A stretch of DNA of 37,729 bases, taken from contig RQSC01000486.1 of NCBI GenBank assembly GCA_013416795.1, forward strand, positions 1-37,729, given 5' to 3'. This document shows, in pieces, positions 3,439-35,053 of the stretch. Made by a program: the position numbers and the translations under genes. Source of the stretch: Prasinococcaceae sp. CCMP 1430. Its lineage: Eukaryota > Plantae > Prasinodermophyta. The notes under the pieces were generated by a model, which saw only the letters and a list, made by a program, of their open reading frames with translations, was not told where the DNA came from and searched no databases. How positions within the stretch are numbered: position 1 is the first letter of the stretch; each line of letters starts with the position of its first letter.

Positions 3439-5224
3439 GCCCGCCACGCACTGCTCCCTGCACGGCGCGGCCGCGCGCGCGATCGACTTCCCGTTCGGCG
3501 GCGGCAAGGACGGCAAGGACGGCGGCGCCAAGAAGACGGCGCGGCGCTCGGGCGACGCGGGCGGCGGCGAGGGCAACCTCTTCGAGCAGATCACCGAGGG
3601 CATGAAGGCGTCGCTCGAGGGCGCCGCCGAGGTGGAGCGCGTGCTCGCGACGCGCCGCGTGAACCGCGAGACCGAGTACCTCATCAAGTGGATGGACGGC
3701 GGGGAGGACACGTGGGAGCCCGCGGCCAACGTCTCCGAGGACGTGCGGCGCGAGTTCGAGGGCAAGTGGTGGGACGCCTGCAGGGAGGGCGACGAGGACG
3801 GTGCGTGTGGGAGCGCGCGCGTGTGCGCGCGCGTGTGTGTGTGTGCGTGTGCGTGCGCGCGCGCGCGAAGAGGGACGTGCGGCGCCGCGCCTTTGGGCGT
3901 TCGGCGCGCTGAGGGCGCGTCCGGGGGTACGAGGGGTAAGGGGGGAATAAAGGGACGAAGAGGAGCCGCGGGGCGCGCTGGCGCGCTCGAGCACCGCTCT
4001 GACGCCGGCTGCGCCCTTCGCGCCACACACACACACGCCCGTGCTCACACACACACACGCGCGCGACGCACACGCACACGCTCGCACACGCAAACGCAAA
4101 ACGCACACGCAAAACGCACAGCCGTCCTGCAGATGCTCGCCGAGGAGCAGCGCAACCCCCGCAAGCGCGACAAGGACGGCCGCACGGGCCTGCACTACGT
4201 GTGCGGCCGCGGCAAGGCCCGCGCGATCAACGGCCTCATCAACTACGGCGCGCGCATCAACGCGCAGGACGCCGACGGCTACACGCCGCTGCACATCGCC
4301 GCGGGCTACCAGTACGTCGAGACGGTGGCGCAGCTGCTCGAGGCGGGCGCCGACCCGGACCTCGAGGACGGCAGCGGGCGCACGCCGCTGCAGCTCATCC
4401 AGGTGCGCGCGCGCGCGACGGCGCGCGTGCGGTAGCGTGTTGGTGCGATGTGTGTGTGTGTGGTTGCTGTTGTGATGGACGGAGGAGGCCTCCTCGTGCG
4501 TGTGTGGCGCGCGCGTGCGTGTCTGCGTGCGGAAGTGCGCGCGTGCCTTCGAGGCGCCTGCCGTGCGCCCGACACGCGCGCGCGCGCGCGCGCCCGGGAG
4601 CGCGCGTGCCGCACGTGTGCGCGCGCATCGGTCCCTCCTCGACCTCGCGGTCGCGCGCGCGCGCTGACGCGCGCGCCCGCGCCCGCGCCCGCGCACCTCT
4701 CGGCCCTCCCGCAGTACCTCAAGGACGCCCAGCCGCAGGACATGACGGGCCTGGCCAACCGCATGTCGCTGGTGGAGATCGAGCGCTCGATGAACCGCTA
4801 CATGTGGGAGGACGTGCCCGTGACGAGCGTGGTGGACGAGCGCATGGACGGCGAGCGCGTGCTGTACCAGGTGGAGTGGGCGGACGGCGGCGAGATGCAG
4901 TGGCTCCCCGCCGACCAGCTGCACCCGGGCTTGATCGAGGACTTCGAGGCGGGCCTCGAGAGCGCCGAGTTCGAGGCCATCGTCGACGCGCGCGAGAACG
5001 TGGACGGCGCCGAGTACCTCGTGAAGTGGGCCGACGGCGAGACCAGCTGGGAGCCCGCGGGCAACCTCGACGAGGAGGACATCGCGGAGTTCCTCGCCAA
5101 GGCCGAGGGCGCGGACGCCGAGGGCGCCGAGGGCGCCGAGGAGGCCGAGGAGGCAGGCGCCGAGGGCGAGGGTGCCAAGGCGGAGGGCGAGGCCGCGAGC
5201 GCGGAGGCCGTGGCGTCCAAGTAA
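3437..5224 (+). CDS. cpSRP43: Chloroplast signal recognition particle 43 kDa subunit; exons 3437-3800, 4122-4402, 4715-5224
   Basis: Chromodomain (EYLIKWMDGGEDTWEP), then ankyrin repeats (DGRTGLHY, DGYTPLHIAAGY, SGRTPL), then two chromodomains (YQVEWADG, EYLVKWADGETSWEP). GT-AG introns have matching phases (1 and 0). Confidence 0.9.
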
Positions 5225-6979: not shown

Positions 6980-8988
6980 CTACCTGGCCGCGCGCTTGCG
7001 CTTGGACGGGTCGAGCAGGCGCTTGCGCAGCCGCACCGCGCCGGCCGCGCACTCGATGAGCTCGTCCGCCGCGACGTACCCCATGGCGTCCTCGAGCGTC
7101 AGCCGGCGCGGGGGCTGGAGGCGCACCTTTTCGTCCTTGCTCTGCGTCCGCATGTTGTCGAGCTTCTTGGCGCGGACGGGGTTGACGTCGAGGTCGCCCT
7201 CGCGCGCGTTCTCGCCGATGATCATCCCGGCGTAGCAGGCGTCCCCGGGCTCGATGAAGAGCGTGCCGCGCTGCTCGAGCGCCCCGAGCGCGTGCAGCGT
7301 GGCCGCGCCGTCCGCCATGGACACCATCACGCCGCTCCGCAGCCCGCCCAGCGCGCCGCGCTTGCGCTCGTAGCCCAGCACTCGGCGCGTGGCCACGCCC
7401 GTGCCGCGCGTGATGCCCACGAACTGCGCGCGGAAGCCCACCAGGCCCCGCGTGGGCGCGCGGAAGGACAGCCGCGTGCGGCCGCCAGGGAGGCCGCTGG
7501 ACATGTCCTGCAACTCGCCGAGGCGCTGGGTGAGCGCCTCGATGATCGCCCCGGCGTGCTCGTCCGCGACGTCGGCCATCACCTCCTCCACGGGCTCCGC
7601 GAGCTCGCCGTCCTCGCCCTCGCGGTAGAGCACGGCGGGCGGCGACACGCTCAGCTCGTAGCCCTCGCGCGTGAGCGTCTCCAGCAGCACGCCCAGGTGG
7701 AGCTCGCCGCGCCCCTGCACCTCGAAGGCCTCGCCCGCGCCCTCGGCGGGGCGCACGCGCAGGCTGACGTTGGTCTCGGCCTCGGCCGCCAGGCGCTCGC
7801 CCAACTTGGCCGCGGTGAGCACGGCGCCGCCCTTGCGCGGGCTGCCGTCGGCCTCCTTGCCCGCCAGCGGCGAGTCGTTCACGGAGAACGTCATGGCGAG
7901 CGTCGGCGCGTCGATGGGCGTCGCCGGCAGTGCCTCGCCGACCTCCGGGGCACACACCGTGTCGGTGACCGACGCGCCGCCCACGCCCGCCAGGCTGACG
8001 ATGTCGCCGGCCACCGCGCGCTCGATCTCCACCGACTCGGTGCCGCGCCGCTTGAGCACCTTGGCGACGCGCGCCAGGCCGTCCGCCGAGGCGCCCACGC
8101 CCGCGGGCTTGGGCTCGCCGCCCGCGCCCAGCGCCTTGAGCCTGTCGCCCACGCCCGCACTGCCCGCCATCACGCGGCCCGTCACGATCCTGCCGAGGTA
8201 GGGGTCCCGGCTCACCATCGACACCAGCATGGCGAAGGGCGCCTCCGGCGCGACCGCGGGCGCCGGCATGGCCTCCAGCAGCGCGTCGAGCAGCGGCGCC
8301 ATCGCCGCCGACTCCTCGCCGGGCGGCGTGCCGCCGCCGCGCAGCGCGCGTGCGGCGCGCGGGAGGCCGGCGAGCGAGCGCGTGCGCGCGCGCACGGCGC
8401 GAGAACGCTGCCATCGCCACGCACCTGGCGTACACGGTGGTGAACTCGAGCTGCTCGTCGGAGGCACCCATGGCGGCGAGCAGGTCGAAGACGTCCGACT
8501 CGGCGGCGGCGCAGCGCTCCTCGGTGGCGCCGTCGCGGTCGACCTTGTTGAGGCACAGCAGGATCGGCAAGCCCTTGGCCACGGCCTTCTGCACGACGAA
8601 CTTGGTCTGCGCCATCGGCCCCTCGGAGGCGTCCACCACCAGCACGGCGGCGTCCACCATGTCGAGGACGCGCTCCACCTCGCCTCCGAAGTCGGCGTGG
8701 CCGGGCGTGTCCACAGCGCTCACCGCGACGCCGCGCCACGACAGGCTCGTCACCTTGGACGCGATCGTGATGCCGCGCTCGCGCTCCAGCGACAGCGCGT
8801 CCATCACGCGCTCGGCTCCCCCGCTGCCGCCCAGCGCATCGGCGGCGCCCAGCAGCGCGTCCATCAGCGTCGTCTTGCCGTGGTCGACGTGCGCGATCAC
8901 CGCCGCGGAGCGCGGCGGCGCGGCGCGCGACGACGACGACGCGAAGGCGGCCAGAGCGTGCGGCAACGCCGCGCCCAGCGGCGCCGAC
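6980..8988 (-). CDS. typA: TypA/BipA translational GTPase (organellar); intron donor at 8424, acceptor unresolved; 5' end uncertain
   Basis: G1 IAHVDHGKTT, RERGITI, DTPGHADFGGEVERVL, NKVDR, and later GRGELHLGVL and GMIIGEN..DLDVNPVRAKKLDNMR, ending RLRKRLLDPSKRKRAAR*. Confidence 0.92.
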
Positions 8989-9930: not shown

Positions 9931-12262
9931 CTAGCGTCGACCGACGATGGGCGCGGTAAGCCGTTCGGACGCTCGCTTCGGCGCGCGCGGCATGGCTGTG
10001 GGCGCCGGGGCGGCTTGAAGGGCGTCGACATTCGTGGCGTCCGCCAGTGCCACGTGGTGCTGTGGCACGTTGCCGTCCGCGGCGCTTCCGTCGCCACAGC
10101 TTTCGTCCGGATCCTCGCGGCCGGGCGCCGGCTCCGCCGACTCGTACGTCGGGCCCCCGCCACTGCAGCCGTGCGAGTCCGAGGGCGCATTGGCGGGCGT
10201 CGAGGCGCCGGACGAAGATTCACGCTCGCTGCTCCCGCCCTTGCTGCTTCCAGAGGCGGGCACCACGTCGCCCACGTCGTCGGTGCCACCACTGGCACTG
10301 GCAGAAGCGCTTGCAGCGACAGCGACGGTAGCGTCGACGCCAGCCCTGGTGGGCGCATCGAAGCGAGACGCAGCGGCAGTCAGGGAGGCCGGCGCGTCGC
10401 ATCCCTCACCGCCATAGCTCATGCCTGTGGTGACACCAGCAGTCTCAGCGGCGGCGGGGCTCGTGACGGTTTGCGCCCCGCTGTCTTGCGTGGCGAGTAT
10501 CTGCATGAGCGCGCCTTGGGTGGCCTCGAGTGCTTGCAGATGCGCGACCTCCATGACCGCCCAGGCCTGTGTGGACTCGCACCGACGCGCGAAAGGGGGC
10601 ACGCAGTAAGCGGCGCGGCCCGGCCCTGTCAGCGGTGCGCATGACGTCACGCGAACTGTCGATGCACGAAACGGGCGCGCGACCGCCAAAACAGCACGCC
10701 GCGCCGCAGGCACGCGAGGACACGCCGAAGCCCTGACAGGTCGGTCGACGTGGCCGCAGCAGGGATGCGCGTGATTGGGGCGAACAGGGCGAGGCGCTTG
10801 CGGCGGAGCGGCGCGAATGACGCACCTCGTTGGAGCGCCGCAGGCCGTCGCTGAGCAGCTTGAGCTCGGACCGAAGGTTGCCGACGTGGTCGCAGAGCAC
10901 GTCGAGCTCCGCGCGATGGGTGGAGATCTCGGCGACGAGCTGGGCGTAGTCCGAGGTCGGTAGGCGGATCGCATCCTCCTCGACGTCCTTCGCGCTGACG
11001 TTGGCGCCAGCCTGAGACTTGGTAAGGGGCGGGGCGCGCGCTGGCACGTCCTCGTCTTCGGTCTCCGCGAGTCTGTCTCCAGTGGCGGTGTCGATGGCGC
11101 CCACGGCGGCGTTGAAGCGCTCGACGATCCTCGCGACTTTGGTCGGCGTCGGCCTGCGAAGGCTGCCGCGACGACGACGCTCGGATGCCGCAGGCGCAGC
11201 ACCGGTGGGTGCCGCAAGCGCCTGACCCTCGCGGCCGCCGCCACTGGCATCGGCGGCGTCCGTTCGTTCGAAGGCCGCGCGCGCCTCGGCCGCGCGGGCC
11301 AGCGCCTTGGCGAGGGCGCCCTGCGCGCGCGTCTTCTCGGCGGACGGGGTCCTGGCGGGCGCGGCGGGCGCGACGTCCCCGACGCCACGACGGTCGCGGT
11401 CGACAGCGCGCCGTGCGCACGTGGTTGGAAAAATACGTACTGTCAGTCAGTGGCAGCGGCATGCCAAGGTTGTGCACGCGACAGAGCATGCACACGCACA
11501 CGCGAGGGCGAGGGCGGACGCGCGCTGGCGCGCACACGCGGACGCGACGGAGCAGCGCACGCGCGCGCAGGCACGGCACACTCAAACGTTTCAAACACGT
11601 CAAGCGCACGCGACACACAATGCCTCGTCGACGGCGTCAGGTCCGTCGACCACGGACCTGTCCGCGCTGCCAACGCCTTGCGAGTCGCGCCCGCCGCCCG
11701 CCACCGTCGAGGACGTCGCCTCGGCAGCTGGCTCGAGCTTCGAAAGAGCGGCCGGCAGCGACTCCGCCTCGCCTTCGTCGACGTATGCCCCGCGCGCATC
11801 GCTATTGGCGCCTGCGCTAACAGGCACCTCGGACTCGGCGGTGTCGCCGACAGGCGCGACGGCAGCGGCGGCAGCGATGGAGACGAACGAGGAGCTCTCG
11901 CCCGCGTTGGGGTTGGTCGCCCGGGCCGCCGCGTCGGCCGCGGCGCGCCGGCGCCTCCTCGCGCGCCTCCCCGCGGTCCTCAGCCGGCGGCGCGCGAGGC
12001 CCAGGCCGAGCAGCNNNNNNNNNNNNNNNNNNNNNNNNNNNNNNNNNNNNNNNNNNNNNNNNNNNNNNNNNNNNNNNNNNNNNNNNNNNNNNNNNNNNNN
12101 NNNNNNNNNNNNNNNNNNNNNNNNNNNNNNNNNNNNNNNNNNNNNNNNNNNNNNNNNNNNNNNNNNNNNNNNNNNNNNNNNNNNGCCCCGGCGGGCGGCG
12201 GTGTGGCGCGGCGCCGACAGCGCCGCCGCGCAACGCCGCCCTCGCGTTTGAATTTCTGGCGC
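9931..12262 (-). CDS. Hypothetical multi-exon low-complexity/coiled-coil protein spanning gap 12015-12184; confident exons ~11350-10826 and 10566-9931
   Basis: A phase-0 GTGCGT...CACAG intron lies at 10825-10567. The heptad-like segment [32 protein letters not shown] joins [24 protein letters not shown]. No family recognised. Confidence 0.5.
12015..12184. other. Assembly gap
   Basis: Run of N. Confidence 1.
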
Positions 12263-15981: not shown

Positions 15982-16306
15982 AGGCACACGCGCAAACGCA
16001 CGCGCACATACACACACGGAGGGCGAACCCTCTCTCTCTCTCTCTCTCACGCACACACACACACACATGCAACACGCACGCAGACACACACACACACACG
16101 TGCGACACACACACGCACACACACGCACAGCGAAAGACAGAGACACTCACCTTCCGGACATGTTCATGAATCCCCTTGGCCCGAACTCGCCCAGCCTGCG
16201 CACGCGGCTGGAGAGCGCGTCCCTCTCGACGATGTCGTATACGCAAATCTGCGGGAAGGCGTGGTCAGCGCGCGGCGCATTGCGAGCACACGCATGCACG
16301 CACACA

Positions 16307-16338
<32 letters not shown>

Positions 16339-16340
16339 TG

Positions 16341-16397
<57 letters not shown>

Positions 16398-16727
16398 TAC
16401 GTACAATCGGTTGCGTACGAGTGGTCGGAAGCGCCGCCCGTTGAAAATGATGGTGGGAATGCGTTGCATTTGTGCCGTGTGACTGCACGCGCGCGCGCGC
16501 GGGTGTTGAGCGGGCCCGACTCGGAGGGCGGCGCAAGGGGGGGAGGGGGCGGGAGGCGTGTCACACTGCGCATGCGCGGCGGTGGTGGCGGGGGGGGGGG
16601 AGGGCGCGGTCGCGGGGGGAGCTCGCGCGGCGCGCGCTCTCGCGCCTGCGACGGGACGGGGCGCGGGCAGGATCGCCGCGCTACGACATAGATAGTACTC
16701 CGTTCGTCGCTGTTGGCCATCGATCAT
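14907..16727 (-). CDS. Hypothetical protein; exons 16469-16401, 16248-16151, 15852-15675, 15414-15279, 14992-14907, plus a possible first exon from ATG 16727
   Basis: Five exons join in one open frame through GT-AG sites with consistent phases (MQRIPTIIFNGRRF...ICVYDIVERD...AVSIDVDDALYG...WLVPPMLQKG...FDWDSLTA*). No family recognised. Confidence 0.6.
16301..16395. repeat. (CA)n-TGC-(TG)n inverted microsatellite (near-perfect hairpin/cruciform)
   Basis: CA tract 16301-16338, loop TGC 16339-16341, TG tract 16342-16395, inside intron 16249-16400. Confidence 0.9.
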
Positions 16728-19506
16728 GCCTCCGAAGTACTACCGCCCAGGCACCGACTCGGCGCCCCCGGCCTACTACGACGCTGGGAGGGAAGAGGAG
16801 GAGGCCGAGGAGCAGGCCCGCAAGGAAGAAAGCGGCAACCCGTTCGAAGAGGCAAGCTCCAGGGGGTGCGTGAGCGACGGCGCCGGGCGTGCGGCGTAAA
16901 AGTCATGCCGCGCACTGCCATTTTTGACGCGCTCGCGCGCTGACGCGGCAGGCGCACCCACCCATGACTGGCGCGACAAATCGACACGCTGCGCGCACGC
17001 CGTACTCGCGGCACGCGCACCGCGCGCTGCGAACCACCACACGCGTGCTTTGTGGACGGCAGGTATGCAAGCGGCTCGTCGTCTGCCCACGGCGGGGGCG
17101 GGGCGTACTACAGCGCCCGAGGCGCCACGTCCGTACGTGGCGTGACGTCGCGGATGGCCTCCGCGGGGCTTGCGGGGGACCGCGAAGAGGTGGCGGGCGC
17201 CGCGAGTGAAAGGTTCGCCGGGGTGACAGACGACGCTGCCGGGAGCCCGCCGCTCTTCGAGAGCGCGTCGGTGGGCGTCAGCGGCGGCCACGGCGGCGTG
17301 GGGGCGGCCGCGCAGCGCATGCGCGCGGCGTCAGCCGCGACGTCTGCGGCGGGGATGTCCTCCGCCCCCGCCGGCGACTACGCGCGCAACACTTCGCCAA
17401 GCGCCGCCGCCGCGTACGCGAGCTACGCCTCGGGTGCCTCGGGCAGTGGCAGCGGCGGCGGCGGCGGCGGCGGCCCCCCGGTGACGGCGGCCGAGCTGCC
17501 TCGCCCGGAGTCGTTCGAGGAGTGCTTCGCGCTGGCTGACGCCAACGGCGACGGCCGCGTGGACGGCGGCGAGGCGCGCGCCTTCTTCGCGCAGAGCCGC
17601 CTGCCGCAGGCGGCGCTCGCGCGCGTATGGGTAGCCGCGGACCAGTACAAGCAGGGATCGCTCGACCCCGCAGGCTTCGGACTCATGCTGTGGCTGGTGG
17701 GACTCGCGCAGGCGGGCGAGCCGCCCACGATGGATGCACTGGGCGAGGCATTGGCAAGTGGGCGCGGTCTGCCGTTACCCGACCTACCCGAGCTCGACTC
17801 CTGGCGCGAGCGCGGCAAGGCGCGCGTGGCGAAGGCGCGCAGCGCCGCAGCGGACAGGGAGAGTTCCGAGGGCGCCTTTAAGCCCAGCGGCAAGAAGAGC
17901 GGCTGGTTCGGCATGGGGCGCAAGCGCAGTGTGCCCAAGGCGAAGATCTCGGCCAAGAATGTCAACTCGATGGTCGAGGCGCTCAAGGTGCTCTACCGCA
18001 CGAAGGTGCGCCCCCTGCTCCTCCTCTGGCCGAAGCGCGTGAAAATGAGCGGGCGGGAGTTCCTGCGGCTGAAGCTGCGGTTCGGGTGGCAGGACGACGA
18101 TCCCCAGTACTCGGTGGGCAAGACCTCGTTCATAAGGTACATACTTGGACGCGACTACCCGACTGCGCAGATCGGACCAGAGCCCACCACCGACAGATTC
18201 GTGGCGGTGATGCACTCATACGATGAGGGCGTCACACCCGGCAACACGCTCGCAGTGCAGACAGACAAGCCCTTCACGGCCCTGCAAAAGTTTGGCACAG
18301 CGTTCCTGAACAAGTTCGTCGCCTCCAACTGCCCCGCGGAGCTGCTGGAGCACGTGACCCTCATCGACACGCCCGGCGTGCTCAGCGGCGAGAAGCAGCG
18401 CATCGAGCGCAGCTACGATTTCTCCGCAGCGGTTGAGTGGTTCGCAGAACGCTCCGATCTCATATTGTTGCTGTTCGACCCGCACAAGCTAGACATCTCT
18501 GATGAGTTCAAGCGGGCGATAGGCGCGGTGCGCATGGCGAGCGACGACAAGGTGCGCGTGGTGCTCAACAAGGCCGACCAGGTGAGCACGCAGCAGCTCA
18601 TGAGAGTGTATGGGGCCCTCATGTGGTCCCTCTCTCGCGTGGTCCGCACGCCCGAAGTGCTCCGCGTATACATCGGCAACTTCAGGGACGCAGAGTACAT
18701 GGTGAAGGACAACGCCGACTTACTCGATCGCGAGGTGCGTACGACGCCACGTTAGCTCTACCAGTGGCCGAGAGGCGAATGGCTCTATTTGCACGTGCGC
18801 CCCCGCCGCTGCGCGCAGCAACTTGTTGAACTTGAATATTGAACGCGCGCGCAAAAGGGCGGAAAGGCGCCGCGGGTCGTCTGTCACTCGACAGGCCTTT
18901 GCCGCTCGGCGGCTCTGCGGGGTGCCAGCCTCCGCCAGCCTCCGCCAGCCCGCTTTCGTGCGTGATTGCATGTGTGATGATTTGCATGCGTAAATATCTA
19001 ACGCGCCGATCAAACGACGAAACTACGCACGGACGGGTGGCGCGGGCGTGCCCTCCGATCCAACTGATCCCATCGACCATCGGCGGCGCGCACTGGCACC
19101 GTCACAGCGCGATGACCTCCTGAACGATCTGTACGACCTTCCGCGTCGCAACGTCGCGCGCAAGATCAACGAATTCGTGAAACGCACTCGAGCGACGAAA
19201 ATCCACGCATACATCATGGCGTACCTGCGGGCGAAGGTGCCAACGTTCGGCAAGGAAAAGTGGCACGCCCGCCAGCTGGAGAAAATGGAGGAGACGTTCC
19301 AAAAGGTGGCCGCGCAGCACGCGCTCGCCCCAGGGGACTTCCCACCGGTGGAGTATTTTCGCGAGAAGATGCAAGGCTTCAAGGTCCACAAGATCCCCAG
19401 CATCAGCAAGAGAGCCATAGAAAGACTCGACGAGGTCCTCTCGGAGGACCTGCCGCGCATGATGCAGCAGTACGGCAATCCGTTTGCCGAGGCGGCCTCG
19501 TACTGA
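16726..19506 (+). CDS. EHD: EH-domain-containing dynamin-like ATPase (plant-type EHD, N-terminal EH); exons 16726-16865, 17063-18734, 19108-19506
   Basis: EF-hand/EH domain (FALADANGDGRVDGGEARAFF), QYSVGKT, IGPEPTTDRF, IDTPGVLSGEKQRIERSYDF, LFDPHKLDISDEF, VVLNKAD and LPRRNVARKINEFVKR. Intron phases (2 and 0) are consistent. 18018-18104 is anomalous (see findings). Confidence 0.92.
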
Positions 19507-19623
19507 ACCTTCGCCACTTCCAGGAAGGACCGGAAGGCAGGGCCTGGAGCGCCTAGCAAGCCGGCGCGCATCCCCCCCCCCCCCTAGTGTGTTGTTCAAT
19601 ATTTCATTATCTTTACTGCTATG

Positions 19624-22600
19624 TTACATCCAGCGCTCTTTGTCTGCTGCGGTCTGGTACGAGTCATCCGAGCCAGCGGGGGTTTGGAAGGGCGCCGTGG
19701 CATCCTCGTCGCCCTGGCTGAGCCTCTCGGTCACCTCGGAGGAAGCCTCGTCGACGTCGGTGGCGCCCGTCTGCTGGGGCGCGCCAACCTCCTCGGGCGA
19801 CTCCTCAATCTCGCTTTCCTCCTCCGTCTCATCGCTAGCCTTAGAGGATGATGACCAAGCCGAGGCTGGTCGCTCTGGCTGGGACGCTGCTGCGCCACCA
19901 GACGCCTCAATGGCGCTGCCGCCTGCCTGCGCGCGAACGATCATGCTCCTCACCATTCTGCGCGCCTTCCAGCCGCGCGCAAACGCTTGGATGGTAAGCG
20001 CCGCCGCCATGCGCACTGACTCGATCTGGTGCACGTTCTGCAAGACGGCGTGCTGTGCCTCGACGATGTTCTGCAGCGCCTCGATCTGCGCTTCGACGAC
20101 CATCTCTTTCGAGGCGAGCCATTTCATCTCCTGGCGCTTTTCCTCCTCGTATTCGGGCACCTCCACGCCCACCCTGTCGAGCACCTTTTCAGCGATCAAC
20201 TCGGCGAGCTCGCGCGGGGACATCGAGCCCAGCGGGGACTCGCGGGCGCCATGATCAAGCGCGCTATGGAGCGGATGGCTCGTGAACCCGCCACCCTCGT
20301 CCTCGCTCGAGTCGCCCGAACCGGACACGATCGCTCGCAGCTGCTGCGCCTGCAGCGTGCAGAGGCACGCGACAATCTCGCGGCGCGATACCCACGAGGA
20401 ACCGTCACTCATGGGCATGCGCAAGTGCGCGTCGACGAAGGCGCGGCGCTCCGCCAGCTCCTCCTCGTCGTCCGAGTCGAGGCCCATTTGGTCCACCAGC
20501 CCGCTGAGCTCAGCCTGGACGCAGCCCATCACGGCGCCCACGGCGCGGTCGGCGACGCCGAGGCAGCCCCCGCGGTCGGCCTTGATCTCACCGCGAGCGA
20601 TAGCGTCTGCCTTGGCCTGAGCGCGCTTGGAAGCCGTGCGCGAATTCTTCATCTTGTCCAGTCGCGCCTTGCGCTGCGCCAGGCGCTTGTGCAGCATCCC
20701 AAGATACACGAATGGGGGCACCTCGACGCCCGTGTCCTCTACCGCCATCTCGGCGTCCATCGTGGCGGCCTCATCCGAGGAGCTTTCGAGCAGCTTGCGC
20801 TTTGTCCTCTTCTTCGTATACCATTCACCAAGCAGGCCCATCGCCTCGCCGCCTACGCTCACCTTGTCGTCGGGGCGCGTGCTCGCATCGAACTCGGAGC
20901 GCACCTCGACGAACGCGTCTCCAAGCTCGGCGAGCAGGAAGTTGGCAACGATGAAAAGCTCCAGCACGGCGTAGACGACGACCATGATGAACCCCACCCA
21001 GTACTCGGTTGAAGTGACGGCGCCGTTGTTGGAAAGCCTCGTGAGCTCGTAAGCGACACTGATCTCTCCAAGAATGATGGTGAAGAAGTACATCACGCTG
21101 TCCTGGAAGGTGCGGAAGTAGATGATCTTGTCACCGAATACGATGACGGCGGTGGCGGCAAACATGGACATGACAAGCATCAATATTCCGACAACGTACG
21201 CCACGTCCGACGCGCTGCGAATGAGCGTGAGCGTCGTGCGCTTGAACTGCGGCTGGAAGTGCACGAGCATGAGCAGGCGGACCATCAATATTAGCAGCAC
21301 GATTCCACACAACGTGAAGTACAACGTGAGCAGATTTGACATGGTGTCCAGCGTGCTGACCATCTTCTCGAACAGTATGAGGTCCTCGGCGTCGAGCGGC
21401 TTGTCCCACCTCGACTCGCCCCTCGGCGTGCCCTCGCGGTTGTGCAGCAGGTAGCGAGCGGCGGCAGCCAGGTCGTCGTACACGCTGTACCTGGGCTCAA
21501 CTTCGAGGGGCAGGAGGTACGAGAACACGTACGACCACCACACGAGCAGCGACATTACCAGCAGGATGACGATCACGTCGTCCACGAGCGCCCTGCCGTT
21601 CAATAGGCGCCTCATGATGCCACCAGTGAGGGAACCTGCTTCCCTGATGTCCGCGAGGAGGGCGATCACTCGGCTCGCAGCTGCATACGCAATTATGAGG
21701 GCGACGATGCCCTCGAGGGCCGCGCGCACCCAGTTCTGCGTGGTGCTGTAAAGGTTGACCGGCAGCGCCTGCACGTTCTCATTCACAAGAATGTACCCAC
21801 CGGGCACGAAGTCGAAGTCCACGCTGTAGGTGATGAACGTTGAGGCCTCGGCGTTGTAGAAGTAGAACGCCGTGGTCAGCGCGCGCGTGCTCGAGTCGAT
21901 GAATCCGCCCTCGTCGAGGTAGAGCACCATCTCGAAGAAGCGCGTGCGAGTGAACGACGTATCGAACAGTACCCAGAAGCCGTCGCGGTAGCCCTTGAGC
22001 GGATGCGTCGCGAAGCCGAAGGGCGTCTGCGCCTTGCCGAAAGTCTCGCTACTGTTTGCGCTGAGGTCATAGAAGAGCTCCTTGAAAGACTGCAGCGAGG
22101 GCTCGTACAGCTGCGTGCCCTTGAGGAAGACGGGGTCCACACCGAACGTCTCACCTGAGAGAACAGAGCCATCGCGGCAGGTCACGCCCAGGTGGTCGAA
22201 GCGGCGGCTCCCACAAACCTCGACGCCAGATGCGGCGCGCGTCTGGTGCACCACCATGCCAGCGAGGAGGCGATTCGTTCGCCCGGCACTGCGTTTGAAG
22301 ATGGGCTCCTCGGGACCGACGCCCAGGTTGATGTAGCCGGATTCTTCGAGCTCGCGCAGCTCCGCGATGGTGATATTGAAGCGCTTGCCGTCGGCGGTAT
22401 TGACGCGCGCGAGCCCTCCGTCCTCCACGGTGCGGCCCGCGCCACCCGCGCCACCCGCACGCAGCAGTCTGCGGCGGCTCTCAGTCGCATTGCTCGCGGC
22501 AACGCCGCTGCTGGCATCGCTGACCGCGCCAGAAAGTGCCTCAACGAGGTCGTCCGCGTCGCTGGCGCCTTCCGCCGCGGCGTCAGTGGCCCCGCCGACG

Positions 22601-25600
22601 AGCTGCAGGTAGCGCTCGAGCAGGCTATCGGCGCCACTGTCGGTCGATGGGTCATACACGTAGTCCACAGTGACCACGTCGTAGTCGTACAGCTCGTACG
22701 AGCTCACGTTGAAGTCGATCGACAGGTCGGAAGCATCGTGCCGCGAACAGAAGAGCTCTTCCGCATCTTCGCCGACGAAGGATGCGGCGAGGGCCGCCGT
22801 GCGGACGGAGCGAAGCTCGTCCTGGAGGCGCACGCTCTCCTGCACGATCGCCGTGATGGCGCTTGCGTCGCTGGGGCCTGCAGCCAGCGTGACCAGGACC
22901 GCCTGCAGCTCGTCGAGCATATCGATGAGCTCATCGGCAGTCTTGATGTGCTCCGACGTAGTGTCAGTGGTACGCTTGAGGCTGTCAACGTACGAGTCCG
23001 ACACTGCGCGCTGGAACTTGGGCGCGTTGAGCGATGCCGATCGGTACTCGAGCGTCGCCTTGCTCGCGCTGCGGGCGGTCTTCGTGTTGTCGAGCTGGGT
23101 CTGATACGAATTGTAGGCCACCATGAGCCCCTGCGACCACTTCACCAAGTCAAAGTCCACTTCCTGCACTTCGGTCTCAACCTCCACGTTTGGCGACACC
23201 TCAGGGATCTCCACGTCGAGGCCCTTCTCGCGCGCGAAGGCCGCCATGTTCTCCGTAAGGTTGCCCGAGCCGACAGAGGCCGCAATCGACGAGCCGAGGC
23301 CCGCCGCTTCGTCATCAAGCTCACCCCCCGTGTCGGCGCTACGGAGGGTGAGCTCGAAGTCGAAGTCGATGCTGAAGCCCGACTCGAGCAGCGCGCGCCC
23401 GCCGGCGCCGGTGGCACGTGCGTGACGCAGCGAGCGACCGCGGCTGCGGCGCCGGCGCGCAGACTGTCCCGCGGTCACTCCGGTCACGGCACATTCGGTG
23501 CCCGGCGGCGCCGTCTGAAGCATCGCATCGCATAAGAGCGTCAGGTAGTCGTCGTCCTGCGCAAGCCTCACCGCCTCGGCCTCGGCCTCCTCGACCATGG
23601 TCGCTGTCGACGCTGTCTCGATGGCGCCGCCAACGACCGCCTTCTTTACGATGGTGACCGTGCGAACCTCGCTGGTGGTAGTCAGACCCGCAGAGTCGGT
23701 GACGCGGTACGAGTATAGGTACGTGCCTGGCGGGCACGTCCCGGCGGTCGCCGTCTCGATAGGACATGCCTCCAGGCCTTCGTCATTCTTGGTGCCAGTC
23801 ACCTCGACGAGCGCGCTCAGGTCGCCATCCACAGCGTCGACGGCCGAAACGCCACAGAAGATCACGGTCGCGTCTTCCGCGGGCGCCTCCCCATCCGAAC
23901 AGAGGTCAAGGTACAGGCCCTCCTCGTCGGCATAGTTGCGCTGGTAGTCAAAGGTGTAGTTCATTGAGCCGTACAGGGTGATATTGGGAGGCACAGTGTC
24001 GCCGGCCTCGACGTCGTCATCGCCGCCGAGGGCGGCCGCCTGCTCGCGCACGGCGTCGCGCTCTGCGCACGTTGAGAAACCTGTCGAGCACTCGCCATCA
24101 TCGCAGTACTCCTCGTTGAGCTCGGTGCAGGGGTTCGAGATGGTGATCGTGCGAGTCACCGTCGCCTGCTGCGGCGGCTGCGCCAGGTCGTACACGACGA
24201 AAGTCACAGCGAACTCCGTACCGAAAGGCGCGTCGGGATTGACGCAGCCGGTGACGCCCTTGTTGATATCGCCAGTCTTGGTGTAGTACTCGTGGCCGGA
24301 GCAACCGATGCCCTCATTAATGCACGAGTCCGGTGGGCACGACAATATGGTATTGGTCAGGTCGCCGTTCTCCTCGTCGCTTGCGTCGACGCCCAGCTCG
24401 CACAGCACCTCCTCTGATGGGACCGCGCCGTCGCACACACTGTAGCCCGCCTCGAGCTGTTTGACGCTCTTGTACAGTTTAGCGTACTCGCCAAGGACAC
24501 CGTCGCTGCTGGTGCGAAGAGTGATGGTCGGAGGCTGGTCGACGACCACCTCCTCTTCTTCCTGCGGCGCGGACGCGGTGAGTTCGCTCTCGCAGATGAG
24601 CTCGAAGTCGGAGCAGGTGATGCCGTCGGCGCACTGACGCGTGCCCTCGGGGCATCCGCCCTTGGGTACCACTTTGACGTTGCGGTAGGTGCTCACGCAC
24701 ATCCCTGCCGAGTTGCACGCCTCGAAATCGATCACGTAAGGCTCCGTGCGAGGCTCTGGCGAGCGCGAGACTTCACAGTTGGTGACGCCGTTGCGCACGA
24801 AGTTGGACCCGCACGCGCGCAACACGCTGGCGAGGCTCCCTTCCTGCGGGTCGGTCACGTTGATTCCCGGCTCGCAGATCTGCGTCTTGGGCGTGTCGGG
24901 CGTGCACATCACGTACGGGCTGCCCTCTTCAATCTCCACCGGCGGGAGGCCGTCGGGGGGAGGCTCGGGGGTGATGTAAGGCGGCAGAATCTCGACCTCC
25001 TCCTCCTCGTCGAAAGAAATCGCTTGTACGCCACACACGCCACCCGCGCCGGGGCACATGTTGTCGTCGAAGTCGTCGCCCTTGCAGCGCTCGACCTGGT
25101 TGCCGTTTTCGTCACGGCACACGACGTAGATACGACGGCGGGCGACCATGGCCGCGTTTCCGGCGCTGTCGCTCACAGAGTAGGTGACCACATACGGCAG
25201 GTCGATAGTCAGCTGGCTCACGTCGACCTCAAGAATGCCGACGCTCGAGACGAGCGCCGTGACGTCGCCGTCTTCGGCATCGTAGGCCGTGGCACCAGCG
25301 TCGACGTACGGCACGCCCTGGGTCCAGTTGGTACTCATGACGAGCAGTCCCGCAACGTTGCGTTCCGCCCCCGTGGAGTACTCGTCCTGGGTGAGCGACA
25401 GCACGGGTGGGTCCGTGTCTTGGATCGCCACGAAGACCTCAGCAGGCGCACTCTCGGCCTGCACCTCGACGAAAGCCGCGCCGCACACGCCGAAGCGCGA
25501 GCACTGCGGGTCTTCGGGGGTGCTCGAGTCGGCGCACACATATTCGCCATCCTCGCACGGGCTGGTGACTGTGATCACTCGCGTCTCCTCGGTGGAACAC

Positions 25601-28600
25601 ACGCCCGAGTTGTCGGGCGTACCGTCGCAGCTCTCGTCAGTGGCGATGTACGTAATGACGTACTCGCCAACGCGCGTGACGTCCACGTCGCCGAAGCCGA
25701 GCACGCGCACGCTCACGACCCCGTCGATGGCATCCAGCGCGGTCGCTCCAGCATCGGTGTAGCCGGCGGTGGTGTTGCCAACGATAAAAATCTCGCGGTC
25801 GCCGAGCACTGTGATCACGGGTGGGTCGTAGTCGCACTTGAGCTCGTCCGAGTTGTCCGGGCAGTCGTAATCGACGCGGTCACAAACGGCGGAGTTCGAC
25901 ACGCAGCCGCTGAGGTCCGCGCAGCGGAACTGGCCGTCGTCGCACTGGAGCTCCAGCTCCGAGTCATCTTCCTCGTAGTCGTAGTTGATATCGAGCGAGG
26001 CCGCGGTGGGAAGGGGCGCAGGGGGCGGAGGCACTGGCGGCATCGGCGGCTCGGGCACCACGACGACGAAGTCTAGCGAGGTGCACCCGGCAGCCTCGTC
26101 CTCCGCGGTCGGGCAGTTGATGTTGCCATCACAGATGTCGAACAGGTCGATGCACGTGCCGTCGTCGCACGCGGTCTTGCCTAACCCGCACCCCGTTCCG
26201 ACGTAGCTGTGGTCGATCTCGACGAAGGAGTCCACCTCAAAGGTGATTGTGCTCACGCTCGAGTAAACCACCGACTGAGCGCTCGGTATGAGGGCATTCG
26301 TCAGCACGCTGCTGCTCGCAAAGACGACTTGTGGCTCACGCAGCAGCGTCTCGACCGCCAAGCTGCTGTCGCCCCCAGGGAAATAGTACGTCAGTGTCAC
26401 GCGCGTGCCGGTGAGCAATTCCGACTCCGACGGCGAGATTTCCACCTCGAAGTGCTCCTGCTTGTGGCCGAGAGCATCGGTGGCAGCAACGAGCACCTCC
26501 TCGACGAATGGCGCCGCGAACATCTCCATGTAGCCGGCGCTGCCTTCGTCAAATAGCGAGTACGCAAGCGCCGCAAAAGTTGCCTCCAAAGTCACAGCGG
26601 TGCCAAGCACGGCGGCCGGCGGGGGCAGCGGGGGCGGCGAGGGCGGCGGGCTCGGCGGCGGGCTCGGAGGCGGTGAAGGAGGAGGGCTTGGAGGAGGGCT
26701 TGGAGGAGGGCTCGGGGGCGTGTGTGTGCACGTGTGAGTGTGCGCGCTCGCTCACCAGCAGCAAGGCGGTGGGCTCGGCGGCGGTGGGCTCGGCGGCGGT
26801 GGGCTCGGCGGCGGTGGGCTCGGCGGCGGTGGGCTCGGCGGCGGTGGGCTCGGCGGCGGTGGGCTTGGCGGCAGGCTCGGCGGAGGCGGGCTCGGTGGAG
26901 GTGGGCTTGAGTCGGCCTGGACTGCGACGACCACACTGAAGGACGTCACGTTGACGTATGCGTACGCGTATGAGGCATTCACATACGAGATAGTGTGCGG
27001 CTCGAGTACTTCGGCCCATTCGGTGGAATTGATGCTGTCGGCCTTCAGAATGTACACGCCACCCTCGCCATATGGCTCGTACGGAACCTGCAGCGTCACA
27101 GGCTGGTCGAACGCCATACCGTGCGGCGTGAGCGATACATAGTCTGAACGGGCGCCCTTGCCGAACGCGCCAGACGACAACTTCTGCGAAAGCGTCGGCA
27201 CGTCGTTCGAGCTGAGCGCTACCATGCCGAGTGACATGCTGCCAGAGAACGCCCCGGCAGGCACGCGCATCTGGTGGCCTGTGCCCGCGATCTCCATCGT
27301 GCCTCCCCGGTCGCCCTCGAACTCTTGCGCTCCGGAGCGGTGGGCGCGCACGGCATCGCACGCATCCCCGCCGCCTTGAGACCCGCAATACTCCCTCATC
27401 ACGAGCAGGCACCTAGGCGTGGCGGTGGTGGGATCGAAGGCGTAGGACGCCCCTCTCCCGGGGGCGGCGCACTCCTGGCGGGTGCAGGGACACTCGTACG
27501 CGATGCCTCGGATGCCGCTGTCGCACTCGAAGGGGCATTCGAGCGAGTACCCATCGGCGAACTTCGGCGGCCCGCCCACGAAGTGTCCGTTGAAGCTGTA
27601 AATGTGGTCGACCAAGAGGACATCCGTCATGTCGTTGAAGTCAGTGAAATCGGTCTGTGACAAGCCTGCCTCAAGCAGAAGCTCCAACGGTGTCAATTCC
27701 CTGGCGGACGAGCTGAGGTGCCTCTTTCGCCGTCTGTCGTCGTCGTCGCCACCGGTGTCAGGGAAGTCAAAGCGGGTGCGCGCGGATTCGTCCGCCTCTT
27801 CGTAGTCCAACTCAACGAGGTAGGTTGTCGTGCCATCGCCGGCCCGGCCCTTCAAGATCTCCCCAGCCGCGCGCAGGGCCTTGTGAAACTTGATCGCCGC
27901 GGCGCGGTCGAATAGACCGACGCGGAAGATCGCCACGCGCGTCTGGTTGTCGGTGCCCGTTGCTGTGGTCTCCCCAAGGCTGTGCCAGACCTCCGCGTCG
28001 CGGAAGAATGTCTGGCGCGTCGGGCAGCACGGATCGCACTTGAACGACGCCACTGCGAGCGAACCCTGCCTCTCGCCGCACGTGCTGTACGCGGCGCCCA
28101 CTTTCTTGTTGGGGTCCGACTGGACGGGGACGCACGACGCGACAGCTTCCTTGCACGACTCGTCAACCTCTGAGTAGCAAGGGTACTCGTCGTAGCAAGA
28201 GTTGGTCGTGTCAACGACCTCGCCGAGGGCGCACGTCTCGCCTGAGGTAAATTCTTGCTCCGCGGCTCCCTCAAACGAGTAGTAGGGCTGGGATTCGCAC
28301 TCGAGCGCGTCCGTGGCGTTGGCCGGGCGCTCGGGCGTCACGCACAGGCGCTCGTCACGCTCATAGTACTCCTGCGGCTGTAAGGTCAGCGAGATCGTGT
28401 AGTCCTCGTACCGGTGGTTGTGCCCCGAATAGTCGTAGTCTCGGTTGTTGATCGCGTAGTCGTACTCGTGGTTGTGGTAGTCACTGTACTCTTGGTTGTG
28501 GTAGTAGTCACTGTGCTCTTGGTTGTAGTAGTCACTGTGCTCTTGGGCGTTCATCGCGTCGTCGTAGTAGTACTGTCGGTTGTAGTGCTGACTATATTCT

Positions 28601-30615
28601 TGGTTGTGGTACTCACTGTACTCTTGGTTGTCGTAGTACTCACTGTACTCTTGGTTGTCGTAGTAGTCACTGTAGTCTTGGTTGTTGATGCGCGCGGCGG
28701 CCGAGGCAACAAGGTCCAACGCGTCGTACACCGCCTCGAAGAGGTCACCGTCGGGGGCGTCGTGCGTGGGAAAGACGATGCGCACGGCGCCATCCACGAC
28801 GTACTCCGGTGTGTCCAGGGAGACTGTGTCGCCGCCCACCACCGTGTCGGGAAGAACGGCTGCCTTGATCTGCTCCGTACTCATCGCCCCGAGCTTGTGA
28901 CCGGTGAGCGCCACCTCGCTTATCCCGCGCAGCGTGCGCAGGCCTTCGGGCGAGAAGGCTGCGAGCTGCTCGGGGCTCATCAGCTCGAGCGCGCTCACGC
29001 TCAGGCCGCCTACGGCCGAGGGCGAAAGGTTGGCGAGCTCGCTCGCCGAGTACGCCGCGGAGAACACGCCCGCGTACTCGGCGTCTTCGGTGGACCAGTC
29101 ACCGGTTGCACCCATCACCTCCCGCACGAGGTCGGGGAAGCCGCTGTCCTCATCGCGAAGGGCTTCCAGCCGGCCCGTGAAGCTCAGCTGCCTGTCGAGC
29201 AGCGGCAAGGTCCCCGCAAACTCCTCCGCGAGGTCCGCCAGGGGGTAGTCATAGTCGCGGCCGCCCTCGAGCAAGAAGTGCGCGCACGTGGTATTGTGCA
29301 ACATGTGATACTTGAGCATGTACTCAGAATACTCGAAGAAGTCGCAAACCGCGTCGGGGTGCGAGCAGTCCACCTCCGGCTCCCAATCGTCCTGTGAGGA
29401 AAGCAAGGCGCGCCGGGTGCGCATGCGCCCGGAGGAGTCTGCCGGGGCGCCGGAGGCGGGGCGGTCTTCGACCGCCGCCGCCGCGCCGCCGCGCGCCTCC
29501 GCGAGCGCGCGCCCGTCACGCAGCACGCGATCGATGCGCGAGTTGAACGCCCGCAGCCTGCGCGAGGCCTCGCCACCCGCAAGCAACCCCGTCTTGCGGT
29601 CGACCACCACCGCGAGCGGCGTCTTGGGCAGCGGGCACGACGCCAAGGAGCTCACGACCTGCGGATCGGTACTGTTGGAGATGTCGATGACCTTGGCCGA
29701 CACACGCCCGAACGTGTCCCCGCGCACACGCAGGTAGTACTGGCCGTCGGGCAAATTGACCGGCAGCGTGGCTGTCGAGCGGTCGGGCCTGTTGAATGTG
29801 CGGTCCTGCTCGTACCAGCAGACCTCTTCGGATTGCTTGAGGCACAGGTTCCACGTCGCCTCGGTCATCAGCTCGGCGGCCGAGCGCGGCGGCGCCTCGA
29901 AGCCCGGCGGAGCAAAGAAGCTCGCCGAGACGCGCAGCAGCATCGTGGTCGTGCGCTCCTCGAGGCCGCAGTCGAGGAAGCAGCCGAAACGGCCGTAGCC
30001 CGGCACCTCGAAGGGCGACTCGCAGACTCCGTCGCCGCACACCGGGTCGGTCCACAGCGGCCACACGTTGCCCTCCATCCACGCATACACGCTATCCTTG
30101 CCCTTCATCACCGTGCCCGACTCGCCCGGCGAGAGGACGCTGCGCACGGGGTCCACCACCGTGCTCATCTCGTAGCTGTTGCGCTGCTGCAGCAGCATCG
30201 CGACGAAGAGCCCCACGGCGACGAAGAATACCAGCAGGCCCCGGTGGCCGTCCACTCGCGCCCCCCGCCGCTCGACCACCCCACCCACCACGTCAAGCGA
30301 GCGCTGCACGCCCTGCGGGAGCCGGAAGCGCGCGCTCATGCTGCCCGCGTCCCACTTGCCCGACTGGAGCGCGCGCAGCAGGCGCGGGTCGCGATCGGGG
30401 TTCGCGAACGTGACGGCGGGTGCCCGCTGCTGCACCATCTCCTCGGAGATCTCCGACTCCGTGGCGTCCTCCTCCTCGGCTTCCGCGCCGCCCGACACGG
30501 GAGCGTCCGCCGCGGCGCCGCCCGCAAGCGCCGCCTGGCGCCGCTCCTCGCTCGGCGGGGGCGGGAGCGGCCACAGTGCCCGCCCCGCGCTCGTGCTGGC
30601 GGCGCCGCCGCTCAT
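19624..30615 (-). CDS. Giant polycystin-2 (PKD2/TRPP)-like cation channel, ~3650 aa; exons 30615-26756 and 26710-19624
   Basis: N-terminal TM (LLVFFVAVGLFVAMLL) and CGDGVCESP motif, then ZU5-like, SPPP repeats, two LDLa-like Cys modules and several DUF5011/Ig-like repeats (DPPVITVLG...GATALDAIDG). C-terminal PKD channel region (GFIDSSTR..FYNAE, TM helices, pore FFTIILGE) and an IQ motif (IQAFARGWKARR). The 45-nt intron joins the frames in phase 2 but has an atypical GAG acceptor. Confidence 0.85.
26771..26860 (-). repeat. Six perfect 15-nt tandem repeats encoding SPPPP (extensin/HRGP-like spacer)
   Basis: The unit gggctcggcggcggt (+ strand) occurs six times, with degenerate copies on both flanks. 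Confidence 0.9.
28400..28690 (-). repeat. Coding tandem repeats (~24-27 nt) encoding (D/H)NQE(Y/H)S(D/E)YY
   Basis: Repeated ctcttggttgt..gtagtactcactgta units translate as NQDYSDYYDNQEYSEYYDNQEYSEYHNQEY... Confidence 0.85.
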
Positions 30616-30643
30616 GATGCGCTCGCAAGGGGCCCGAGCCCCC

Positions 30644-31211
30644 NNNNNNNNNNNNNNNNNNNNNNNNNNNNNNNNNNNNNNNNNNNNNNNNNNNNNNNNN
30701 NNNNNNNNNNNNNNNNNNNNNNNNNNNNNNNNNNNNNNNNNNNNNNNNNNNNNNNNNNNNNNNNNNNNNNNNNNNNNNNNNNNNNNNNNNNNNNNNNNNN
30801 NNNNNNNNNNNNNNNNNNNNNNNNNNNNNNNNNNNNNNNNNNNNNNNNNNNNNNNNNNNNNNNNNNNNNNNNNNNNNNNNNNNNNNNNNNNNNNNNNNNN
30901 NNNNNNNNNNNNNNNNNNNNNNNNNNNNNNNNNNNNNNNNNNNNNNNNNNNNNNNNNNNNNNNNNNNNNNNNNNNNNNNNNNNNNNNNNNNNNNNNNNNN
31001 NNNNNNNNNNNNNNNNNNNNNNNNNNNNNNNNNNNNNNNNNNNNNNNNNNNNNNNNNNNNNNNNNNNNNNNNNNNNNNNNNNNNNNNNNNNNNNNNNNNN
31101 NNNNNNNNNNNNNNNNNNNNNNNNNNNNNNNNNNNNNNNNNNNNNNNNNNNNNNNNNNNNNNNNNNNNNNNNNNNNNNNNNNNNNNNNNNNNNNNNNNNN
31201 NNNNNNNNNNN
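30644..31211. other. Assembly gap
   Basis: Run of N. Confidence 1.
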
Positions 31212-31536: not shown

Positions 31537-32322
31537 GACGTGATGAAGTCGTGGGGCGGCCACGGCGGCGACCACGAGGCGGACATACTCGCGACCATGC
31601 AGGGCGCCATGTCCGGGCCGATGGGCGCGCCGGCCGTCCTTGGCGCGCCGGCCGCGAGCGTGGGCATGGGCCAGCCGAACGGCCGGTTCGTCGGCGGGTG
31701 CCTCGACGGCGGGTACGCGCAGCCGCCCGCCTCGCAGGCGCAGATTCTCGGGGGGGGCGACGGCGTCGTGCCGGACTTCTTCTCGCACCAGCAGCAGCAC
31801 CTCCACCAGCAACAGCTCACCGGGCAGGCGCAGCGGCAGGCGCAGAAGCAGGGGGGGCAGGCGCAGGAGCGAGGAAAGGCTGGCCTGCCGCCCAAGGCCA
31901 GGGGCGGGCGGTCGCGCGCGCCGTCGAAGAAACAGTCGCGCGCCGCTGCCTCGCGCGCAGCGGCGGCGCCGGCCGCCACGGGCGCCAAGAGCGGCTCGAG
32001 GAGCGGCAGCAAGGGCGGCAAGAGGACGTCCAGTGGCTCGCGCACGCCCGCGGCGCTCAGGCCCGCCGCGAAGCCCGCCGCGAAGCCCGCCGCGAAGGCC
32101 GCATCGAGGTCCGGTGGCGTGGCGAAGCCCGCCGCCCGGCCCGCTGCCAGATTGGCCGCCAACGGCAAGGGGGCCGGAGCGCAGCTCGCCGCCACGTCCC
32201 CGGCGGCCGCCAAGAACGGCTCGAACCCGAGGGGCAAAGTGCCACGGGCGGGGCTCATGAATGGCTTCCCGCACAACTCGACCGCCGTGCAGGCAGCGGC
32301 GGCGGCGGCGGCGGCGGCGGCG
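31537..32322 (+). CDS. Internal exon of a hypothetical low-complexity (Q-rich, PAAK-rich basic) protein; 5' exons probably in gap 30644-31211
   Basis: CAG acceptor at 31534-31536 and an open frame with HQQQHLHQQQ and KPAAKPAAKAA, ending in a poly-Ala (GCG)9 tract. No family recognised. Confidence 0.5.
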
Positions 32323-32735
32323 AGCTCTCGTTCGACGTGCCTGAGGTCGCGTCCGGAGGCGCCGCCGTGGGCTCGACGGCAGACGCCCTCGTGGTGCTCG
32401 GCAGCGGCGCCGACGCCGACGTGCAGCTCCCCGCCGACGAGGGCGTCGAGGCCCGCCACGCGACCATCGCCTGCCGCGGGGGCAAGTTCTTCCTCACCGA
32501 CGCCGAGTCGTCGGCGGGCACGTACATGCAGGGCGCCAAGCTCATGCCGGGCGTGAGCTACCTGCTGGGAAACGGCAACAAGCTCAGCTTCGGCCCGCAG
32601 GCCACCGAGTTCGAGGCGCGCTTCGAGGACGCGCCCGCGCAGCCCAGCATGGAGGAGACGCTCATGCGCCAGATGGTCGAGGCCAAGCTCAAGGAGGCCG
32701 AGGACAACATCCGGCGCAACGGCGGCGACGCCTGA
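32311..32735 (+). CDS. FHA-domain protein (C-terminal part; start unresolved)
   Basis: VVLGSGADADVQLP..GVEARHATI..GGKFFLTDAESSAGTYMQGAKL..YLLGNGNKLSFG is FHA-like (G-x, S/ARH, DxxSxxGT). Stop at 32733-32735. Confidence 0.7.
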
Positions 32736-34854: not shown

Positions 34855-35053
34855 GAGCGAGCGCACGCACGAGTGTATGTGTGTGTGCGTGTTTGTGTGT
34901 GTTTGTGGGTGGGGTAGGTGCGCGCTCGAGTGGGCGATTGGTCGACGTGAAGGAACGCTCCAGTACATACACCAGTACCCTCTAAGCTAAGCGCGCGTGC
35001 GCATGCGCGCGCGCACTACTCGCGCGCACGTGCGCGCGCGCGCGTGTCCCGAG

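What the first reader, a model, noticed from the sequence alone, without database searches (positions are those of the whole stretch)
18018..18104. 87-nt block in the EHD gene is complemented but NOT reversed
Seen in sequence: between native ...KVRPL and QYSVGKT the frame reads LLLWPKRVKMSGREFLRLKLRFGWQDDDP (29 aa), which is unlike any EHD. Complementing each base in the same left-to-right order (ctc ctc ctc tgg ccg aag... becomes gag gag gag acc ggc ttc...) gives EEETGFAHFYSPALKDADFDAKPTVLLLG. Established: that is the EHD consensus leading into the P-loop (F.SP.L...DFDAKP.V.LLGQYS.GKT), with exact length and frame. Boundaries are ambiguous by 1 nt. Inference: a real inversion gives the reverse complement, so ordinary recombination cannot produce this. 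Candidate causes are a colour-space or assembly/processing error, a deliberate in-silico edit, or, very speculatively, an unknown polarity-switching process. If real, the first Gly of the P-loop becomes Pro and the ATPase is probably dead.
Basis: partly seen in the sequence, partly recalled or inferred. Interest (0 to 1): 0.92.

Follow-up and report, generated by a model that had tools for sequence, protein, structure and literature searches.

The report
In-place complemented block: a data artefact
An 87-base stretch of an alga's EHD gene is written here as its unreversed base-by-base complement, but RNA from the same strain, the published gene model and 13 independent environmental assemblies all carry the normal sequence, so this is a corrupted or edited sequence record and not biology.

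Summary
Window 18017-18103 (87 nt) lies in exon 2 of the EHD gene of Prasinoderma coloniale. At 87 of 87 positions it is the unreversed Watson-Crick complement of a same-strain transcript contig. That contig is otherwise 100% identical to all three exons.

Thirteen independent Tara/ENA/Logan metagenome contigs, 97.7-99% identical to the window, carry the normal version; none carries the window's version. The published gene model PRCOL_00006840-RA and an MMETSP transcript also encode the normal peptide.

The block is not biological. It is an in-place complement, or a half-done reverse complement, applied to this copy of the sequence.

A colour-space error fits formally, because only two colour calls differ. 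It is unlikely: the published genome was made with PacBio and Illumina, and no other colour-type transforms were found.

No second block was found in the roughly 21 kb of the window that relatives cover.

The scan has noted the same thing before. About 38 notes describe complemented-not-reversed blocks elsewhere in this genome (not checked here), which points to systematic corruption or deliberate planting. Interest is low.

The parts
18017..18103 (+). 87-nt block written as the unreversed complement of the true sequence. It starts at codon position 3 of Leu365 and ends at codon position 2 of Gly394 of the 736-aa EHD protein.
   Evidence: 87/87 positions complementary to same-strain transcript L003, with 0 other mismatches in the exons. 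The complemented window block matches 14 loci at 97.7-100%; the native block matches none.
18102..18125 (+). P-loop (Walker A) codons. The canonical reading is GQYSVGKT. The window's first codon reads CCC (Pro) instead of GGC (Gly), because the block covers its first two bases.
16726..16865 (+). EHD coding exon 1 (ATG at 16726), followed by a GT...AG intron at 16866-17062.
   Evidence: 100% match to transcript L003; splice junctions read.
17063..18734 (+). EHD coding exon 2: EH domain, EHD_N and the dynamin-type G domain. It contains the block.
19108..19506 (+). EHD coding exon 3 (helical domain, DUF5600; stop at 19504-19506), preceded by a GT...AG intron at 18735-19107.
   Evidence: 100% match to L003; PF18150 on the equivalent ORF of relatives.

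Best explanation
The block is not a property of the organism's DNA. In this copy of the Prasinoderma coloniale sequence, an 87-character slice has been replaced by its base-by-base complement without reversal. This is the result of a text-level A<->T, C<->G substitution, or equivalently of a reverse-complement operation in which only one of the two steps was carried out.

Shown: the true sequence at this site, in the same strain's RNA, in the published gene model and in the natural population, is the canonical EHD sequence. The difference is exactly 87 consecutive complements with nothing else changed.

Inferred: the change entered after the annotated assembly was made. It came either from a defect in the source record or its processing, or from a deliberate or accidental edit when the scan's data were prepared. 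I put these two at roughly equal odds and cannot separate them with the tools at hand. The gene itself is an ordinary plant-type EHD ATPase with an N-terminal EH domain.
For: (1) Same-strain transcript contig L003 (JGI 3300016765) is 100% identical to the window over exons 1, 2 and 3, except at 18017-18103, where 87/87 bases are complements.
(2) P0122, which is EukProt EP00793 Prasinoderma coloniale PRCOL_00006840-RA, and MMETSP transcript P0123 encode the canonical 29 residues. P0122 is otherwise identical to the window's spliced translation.
(3) Thirteen independent metagenome contigs (Tara, other ENA, Logan), 97.7-99% identical, all carry the canonical block. P0127 equals the window ORF with the block complemented, residue for residue.
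(4) The native 533-aa ORF is not among about 15 billion proteins, while the neighbouring exon-3 ORF is.
(5) The block is not codon-aligned and has accumulated no change since the event: one SNP against Tara contigs at 18029 and none against the same strain.
(6) The literal reading removes Pfam EHD_N and the first strand and first Gly of the P-loop of a conserved gene.
(7) Scan notes report about 38 similar blocks of 52-143 nt in other pieces of this genome, in histones, EFL, eIF5B and others (not checked here).
Against: I could not read the public genome record or raw genomic reads of strain CCMP1413, so the same-strain evidence is RNA plus a gene model, not DNA reads. The window carries N runs and may come from a different assembly than the published 22-chromosome one. 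In that case the published gene model does not speak for this assembly. The step at which the change entered is not identified.
Confidence: 0.96

Rival explanations
1. SOLiD-type colour-space decoding error. Two wrong colour nt apart, each off by colour 3, would turn every base between them into its complement when a colour-space consensus is converted to bases.
For: In two-base colour encoding, the window's exon 2 differs from the transcript at exactly two colour positions, the dinucleotides 18016/18017 and 18103/18104, each by XOR 3.
Against: The published P. coloniale genome used PacBio Sequel, NextDenovo, Arrow and NextPolish with Illumina reads. SOLiD is not mentioned (PMC7455551). Colour errors should also produce A<->G/C<->T and A<->C/G<->T blocks, and none was found in the roughly 19 kb compared base by base with relatives. 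Any in-place complement differs from the original at exactly two colour positions, so the fit is automatic and carries no weight.
Confidence: 0.02
2. A second, real copy or allele of the EHD gene in the cultured strain carries the complemented block as a dead pseudogene, while the canonical copy is the one transcribed and annotated.
For: None directly. It would reconcile a canonical transcript with a non-canonical genomic sequence.
Against: The flanks are 100% identical to the transcript over about 2.3 kb of exon, and the block is a perfect complement. No known mutational process makes an unreversed complement. Relatives show a single locus with the same neighbours downstream.
Confidence: 0.01
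3. A real biological polarity-independent copying event, that is, 'swinger' A<->T + C<->G replication as proposed by Seligmann, or parallel-stranded synthesis, wrote the complement into the genome.
For: The pattern is exactly the A<->T + C<->G exchange with sharp switches that Seligmann reports for some GenBank DNA records (PMC4942731). Scan notes report many such blocks in this genome.
Against: The same strain's RNA and gene model are canonical. All natural-population DNA contigs are canonical. The change would inactivate conserved, probably essential genes. There is no decay or polymorphism within the block. No polymerase is known to synthesise a parallel complement.
Confidence: 0.005

Closest known systems
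Strand-handling errors in sequence records (complement applied without reversal, or reversal without complement)
   Same: A contiguous block is the exact complement in the same order. Both boundaries are sharp, nothing else is changed, and independent sequences of the same locus are normal.
   Different: The step and the software are not identified. Scan notes suggest many blocks per genome rather than a single mishandled fragment (unchecked).
'Swinger' DNA, exchange rule A<->T + C<->G (Seligmann; for example the 16S rDNA of the Kamimuria wangi mitogenome, cited in PMC4942731)
   Same: The same transformation, with sharp switches inside an otherwise regular sequence.
   Different: Seligmann reads such records as products of an unusual polymerase state. 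Here same-strain RNA, the gene model and population DNA show the canonical sequence, so the block is in the record and not in the organism. That a submission or strand-handling error also explains those GenBank cases is my own view and is not taken from the paper.
SOLiD colour-space error propagation
   Same: A complement block equals two colour-3 errors.
   Different: No colour-space platform appears in the published methods, and no blocks of the other two transforms were found.
Chromosomal inversion
   Same: A block-wise strand-related change with sharp ends.
   Different: An inversion gives the reverse complement. The reverse complement of the block matches nothing and translates to an unrelated peptide.

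Membership tests
EHD (Eps15-homology-domain dynamin-like ATPase), plant-type with an N-terminal EH domain | EH domain, EHD_N segment, dynamin-type G domain and helical domain (DUF5600) | tested here: met
   The canonical form P0127 has EH, EHD_N (47 bits) and Dynamin_N from profile position 1. DUF5600 lies on the exon-3 ORF. Match to EHD2/EHD4 structures at E about 1e-83.
EHD (literal reading of the window) | Intact P-loop GxxxxGKT and EHD_N | tested here: not met
   The native ORF reads DDDPQYSVGKT, EHD_N is not detected, and Dynamin_N starts at profile position 6.
Inversion | The block equals the reverse complement of the reference sequence | tested here: not met
   The native block has no hit on either strand of 14 loci; only the unreversed complement matches.
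Colour-space decoding artefact | The block is bounded by two colour changes of equal value | tested here: met
   Exactly two colour differences, each XOR 3. This is true of any in-place complement.
Colour-space decoding artefact | Data produced on a colour-space platform, with blocks of the other two Klein-group transforms also present | tested here: not met
   The published methods list PacBio and Illumina only. No A<->G/C<->T or A<->C/G<->T matches to relatives. The source assembly of the window itself could not be identified.
Swinger DNA (A<->T + C<->G) as a biological product | The transformed stretch is present in the organism's own nucleic acids in independent data | tested here: not met
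   The same-strain transcript, the gene model, the MMETSP transcript and 13 metagenome contigs are all canonical.

The most novel reading that the evidence does not exclude
The complemented block is physically present in the nuclear DNA of the sequenced culture, as one of many products of an unknown polymerase or repair process that copies a stretch in parallel polarity (a 'swinger'-type A<->T + C<->G event). The canonical transcript and gene model would then come from another copy or another culture line.
Probability: 0.005. Interest if true: 0.97.

Novelty: not a real feature. Interest (0 to 1): 0.06.

Why it matters
As biology it does not matter. The EHD gene of P. coloniale is intact and ordinary.

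It matters for data quality. Prasinoderma coloniale is the reference genome for the phylum Prasinodermophyta. If in-place complemented blocks sit in a public copy of that genome, they would silently corrupt gene models: the reading frame stays open, so nothing flags them.

If the blocks were planted as controls, this one is correctly recognised as non-biological. A blastn search of the complemented sequence against transcripts or close relatives found this block at full length, with only three weak unrelated hits.

Tried and rejected
- Exact 28-mers across the left junction were searched in JGI metagenome contigs in both native and canonical form. Both gave zero hits, so the positive control failed and the test is uninformative.
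- Codon-usage scans for further complement-only or reverse-only blocks:
  - A strict threshold picked out only the known block.
  - A looser 'sandwich' scan gave candidates at 21250, 29272, 34522 and elsewhere. Relatives showed these to be false.
  - A maximal-segment version was confounded by frame and strand effects and was dropped.
- Self-comparison of the complemented window by blastn found no in-window paralogue matches, and tblastx gave only low-complexity noise.
- Exact look-ups of 20 window ORFs, to fetch more relatives, mostly failed. Only the cytochrome-b5-reductase-like FAD/NAD-binding ORF (P0135) and a TMEM120 exon (P0257) were found.
The TypA homologue P0137 aligns to 6995-8900 without a break, and nothing matches the complemented window.
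- A real inversion, a paralogue and colour-space decoding were considered and rejected as set out above.

Full report
**What is in the sequence.** Window 17052-18755 (+) holds a long ORF. Around 18018-18104 it reads ...KVRPL-LLLWPKRVKMSGREFLRLKLRFGWQDDDP-QYSVGKT.... Complementing those bases without reversing them gives EEETGFAHFYSPALKDADFDAKPTVLLLG. The reverse, the reverse complement and the native reading give unrelated peptides. The ORF matches EHD2 and EHD4 structures at E about 1e-83. In that alignment the 29 native residues do not align, while the EHD2 sequence there is PLEEHYRFGSFHSPALEDADFDGKPMVLVAGQYSTGKT, which is what the complemented reading resembles.

**Whose gene it is.** The closest database protein, P0001, is identical to the window ORF apart from three residues and the 29-aa block, where it has the complemented reading. 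Its 90% cluster contains P0122, named EP00793_Prasinoderma_coloniale PRCOL_00006840-RA by EukProt, and the MMETSP transcript P0123. Every member that spans the site, 14 proteins in all, reads RPLEEETGFAHFYSPALKDADFDAKPTVLLLGQYSVGKT. The window's G+C content of 69.0% agrees with the 69.8% reported for P. coloniale (PMC7455551). The gene has three coding exons, 16726-16865, 17063-18734 and 19108-19506, with GT...AG introns. It encodes a 736-aa plant-type EHD with an N-terminal EH domain, EHD_N, a dynamin-type G domain and DUF5600.

**The decisive comparison.** P0122 is encoded exactly by a 2411-nt transcript contig, L003 (JGI 3300016765).
- L003 is 100% identical to the window over all three exons except for 87 consecutive positions, 18017-18103.
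- At all 87 of those positions the window base is the Watson-Crick complement of the transcript base, in the same order.
Both boundary options are synonymous at the protein level, which explains the ambiguity.
- The block starts at the third base of the Leu365 codon and ends at the second base of the Gly394 codon, so it is not codon-aligned.
- The frame stays open only because the canonical block has no ATT, ATC or ACT codon.
- With this base composition, 87/87 complementary positions has a chance probability of about 1e-47 (my arithmetic).

**Independent DNA evidence.** Thirteen distinct metagenome contigs (Tara Oceans scaffolds, other ENA assemblies and one Logan assembly; loci L001-L015) are 98.5-100% identical to the 200 nt on either side. 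They match the complemented block at 97.7-98.9%, and none matches the native block. The single position where window and Tara contigs agree inside the block, 18029, is a synonymous ACC/ACG difference of the kind seen throughout the flanks. P0127, from three Tara contigs, equals the window ORF with the block complemented, residue for residue. The native 533-aa ORF is absent from the 15-billion-protein collection, while the neighbouring exon-3 ORF is present.

**Consequence of the literal reading.** Taken as written, the protein loses the Pfam EHD_N match, which scores 47 bits in the canonical form. It also loses the first five positions of the Dynamin_N match, and the first glycine of the P-loop becomes proline.

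**What it is.**
- *Not an inversion.* An inversion would give the reverse complement, which matches nothing.
- *Colour-space error.* In two-base colour encoding the window differs from the transcript at only two colour calls, the junction dinucleotides, each by colour 3. Any in-place complement has this property, however. The published genome was made from PacBio Sequel reads with NextDenovo, Arrow and NextPolish using Illumina reads. Blocks of the other two colour-type transforms are absent.
- *Biology.* The nearest biological claim is Seligmann's 'swinger' DNA under the rule A<->T + C<->G, with sharp switches (PMC4942731). Here the test that matters fails: independent nucleic-acid data from the same strain and from the natural population are canonical.
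- *Best explanation, about 0.96.* This is a non-biological in-place complement, or a reverse complement with one step omitted, applied to this copy of the sequence after the annotated assembly was made.

**Is it alone?** I compared the window and its complemented form with every fetched relative. Coverage was:
- at nucleotide level: 1158-3486, 16396-26720, 27214-30642, 32316-33039, 33133-36217 and 37074-37729;
- at protein level: 6995-8900.

Only the 18017-18103 block shows the complement relation. The remaining roughly 16 kb could not be checked against relatives. A codon-usage scan at a strict threshold flagged only the known block, but its power is low.

The scan's own notebook lists about 38 first-reader notes of complemented-not-reversed blocks of 52-143 nt, plus 900-nt 'mirror' blocks, in other pieces of this genome. 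They fall in histones, EFL, eIF5B, Lhcp and other genes, often with one typical length per window. I could not test those notes. If they hold, the corruption is systematic, which fits either a software defect or deliberate planting and argues further against biology.

**What remains open.** I could not see the public record or the raw genomic reads. The window carries N runs and single Ns that do not fit an ungapped PacBio assembly. It may therefore come from another assembly, or it may have been masked. This leaves undecided whether the block sits in a deposited record or was introduced during preparation of the scan's data. The next-steps field lists the checks that would settle this.

**Verdict.** It is an ordinary EHD gene with a corrupted 87-nt slice, and interest is low.

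Noticed in passing
window 33040-33132: A 93-nt stretch containing a single N (33110) stands where Tara relatives L020 (747-1171) and L030 carry about 425 nt. That 425 nt holds the start codon and first exon of a TMEM120-like gene. The 93 nt match nothing in the window or in any fetched locus, whether native, complemented or reversed. It is possibly a badly closed assembly gap or another alteration.
   Followed up: partly
window 9489; 12015-12184; 30644-31211; 33110; 36218-37025: There are two single Ns and three N runs of 170, 568 and 808 nt. Alignments to relatives stop exactly at the run edges, and the relatives have real sequence there, for example the 5' half of an FGGY kinase gene at 36218 onward. 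Whether these are gaps or masks is unknown.
   Followed up: partly
window ~16290-16410 and upstream: Synteny with Tara contigs L001 and L007 ends upstream of about 16409, at a (CA)n/(TG)n tract. Their upstream ORFs (626 aa in both; 214 and 544 aa in L007) have no tblastn match anywhere in the window. This is either a strain rearrangement or a scaffold join.
   Followed up: partly
window 6995-8900 (-): A TypA/BipA GTPase gene aligns to homologue P0137 from residue 44 onward. No in-frame ATG lies upstream within the ORF. The roughly 100-nt gap at 8324-8426 starts with GTGCGT and looks like a short intron. No complemented block explains the missing start.
   Followed up: partly
loci L001-L030: Tara Oceans and other marine metagenomes hold many contigs that are mostly 97-99.5% identical to this P. 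coloniale window, with L030 more divergent. This indicates a widespread natural population very close to the cultured strain.
   Followed up: no
window 19624-26610 (-) and 26752-30615 (-): Very long ORFs whose Tara equivalents carry PKD_channel and Bact_surface_Ig-like domains.
   Followed up: no
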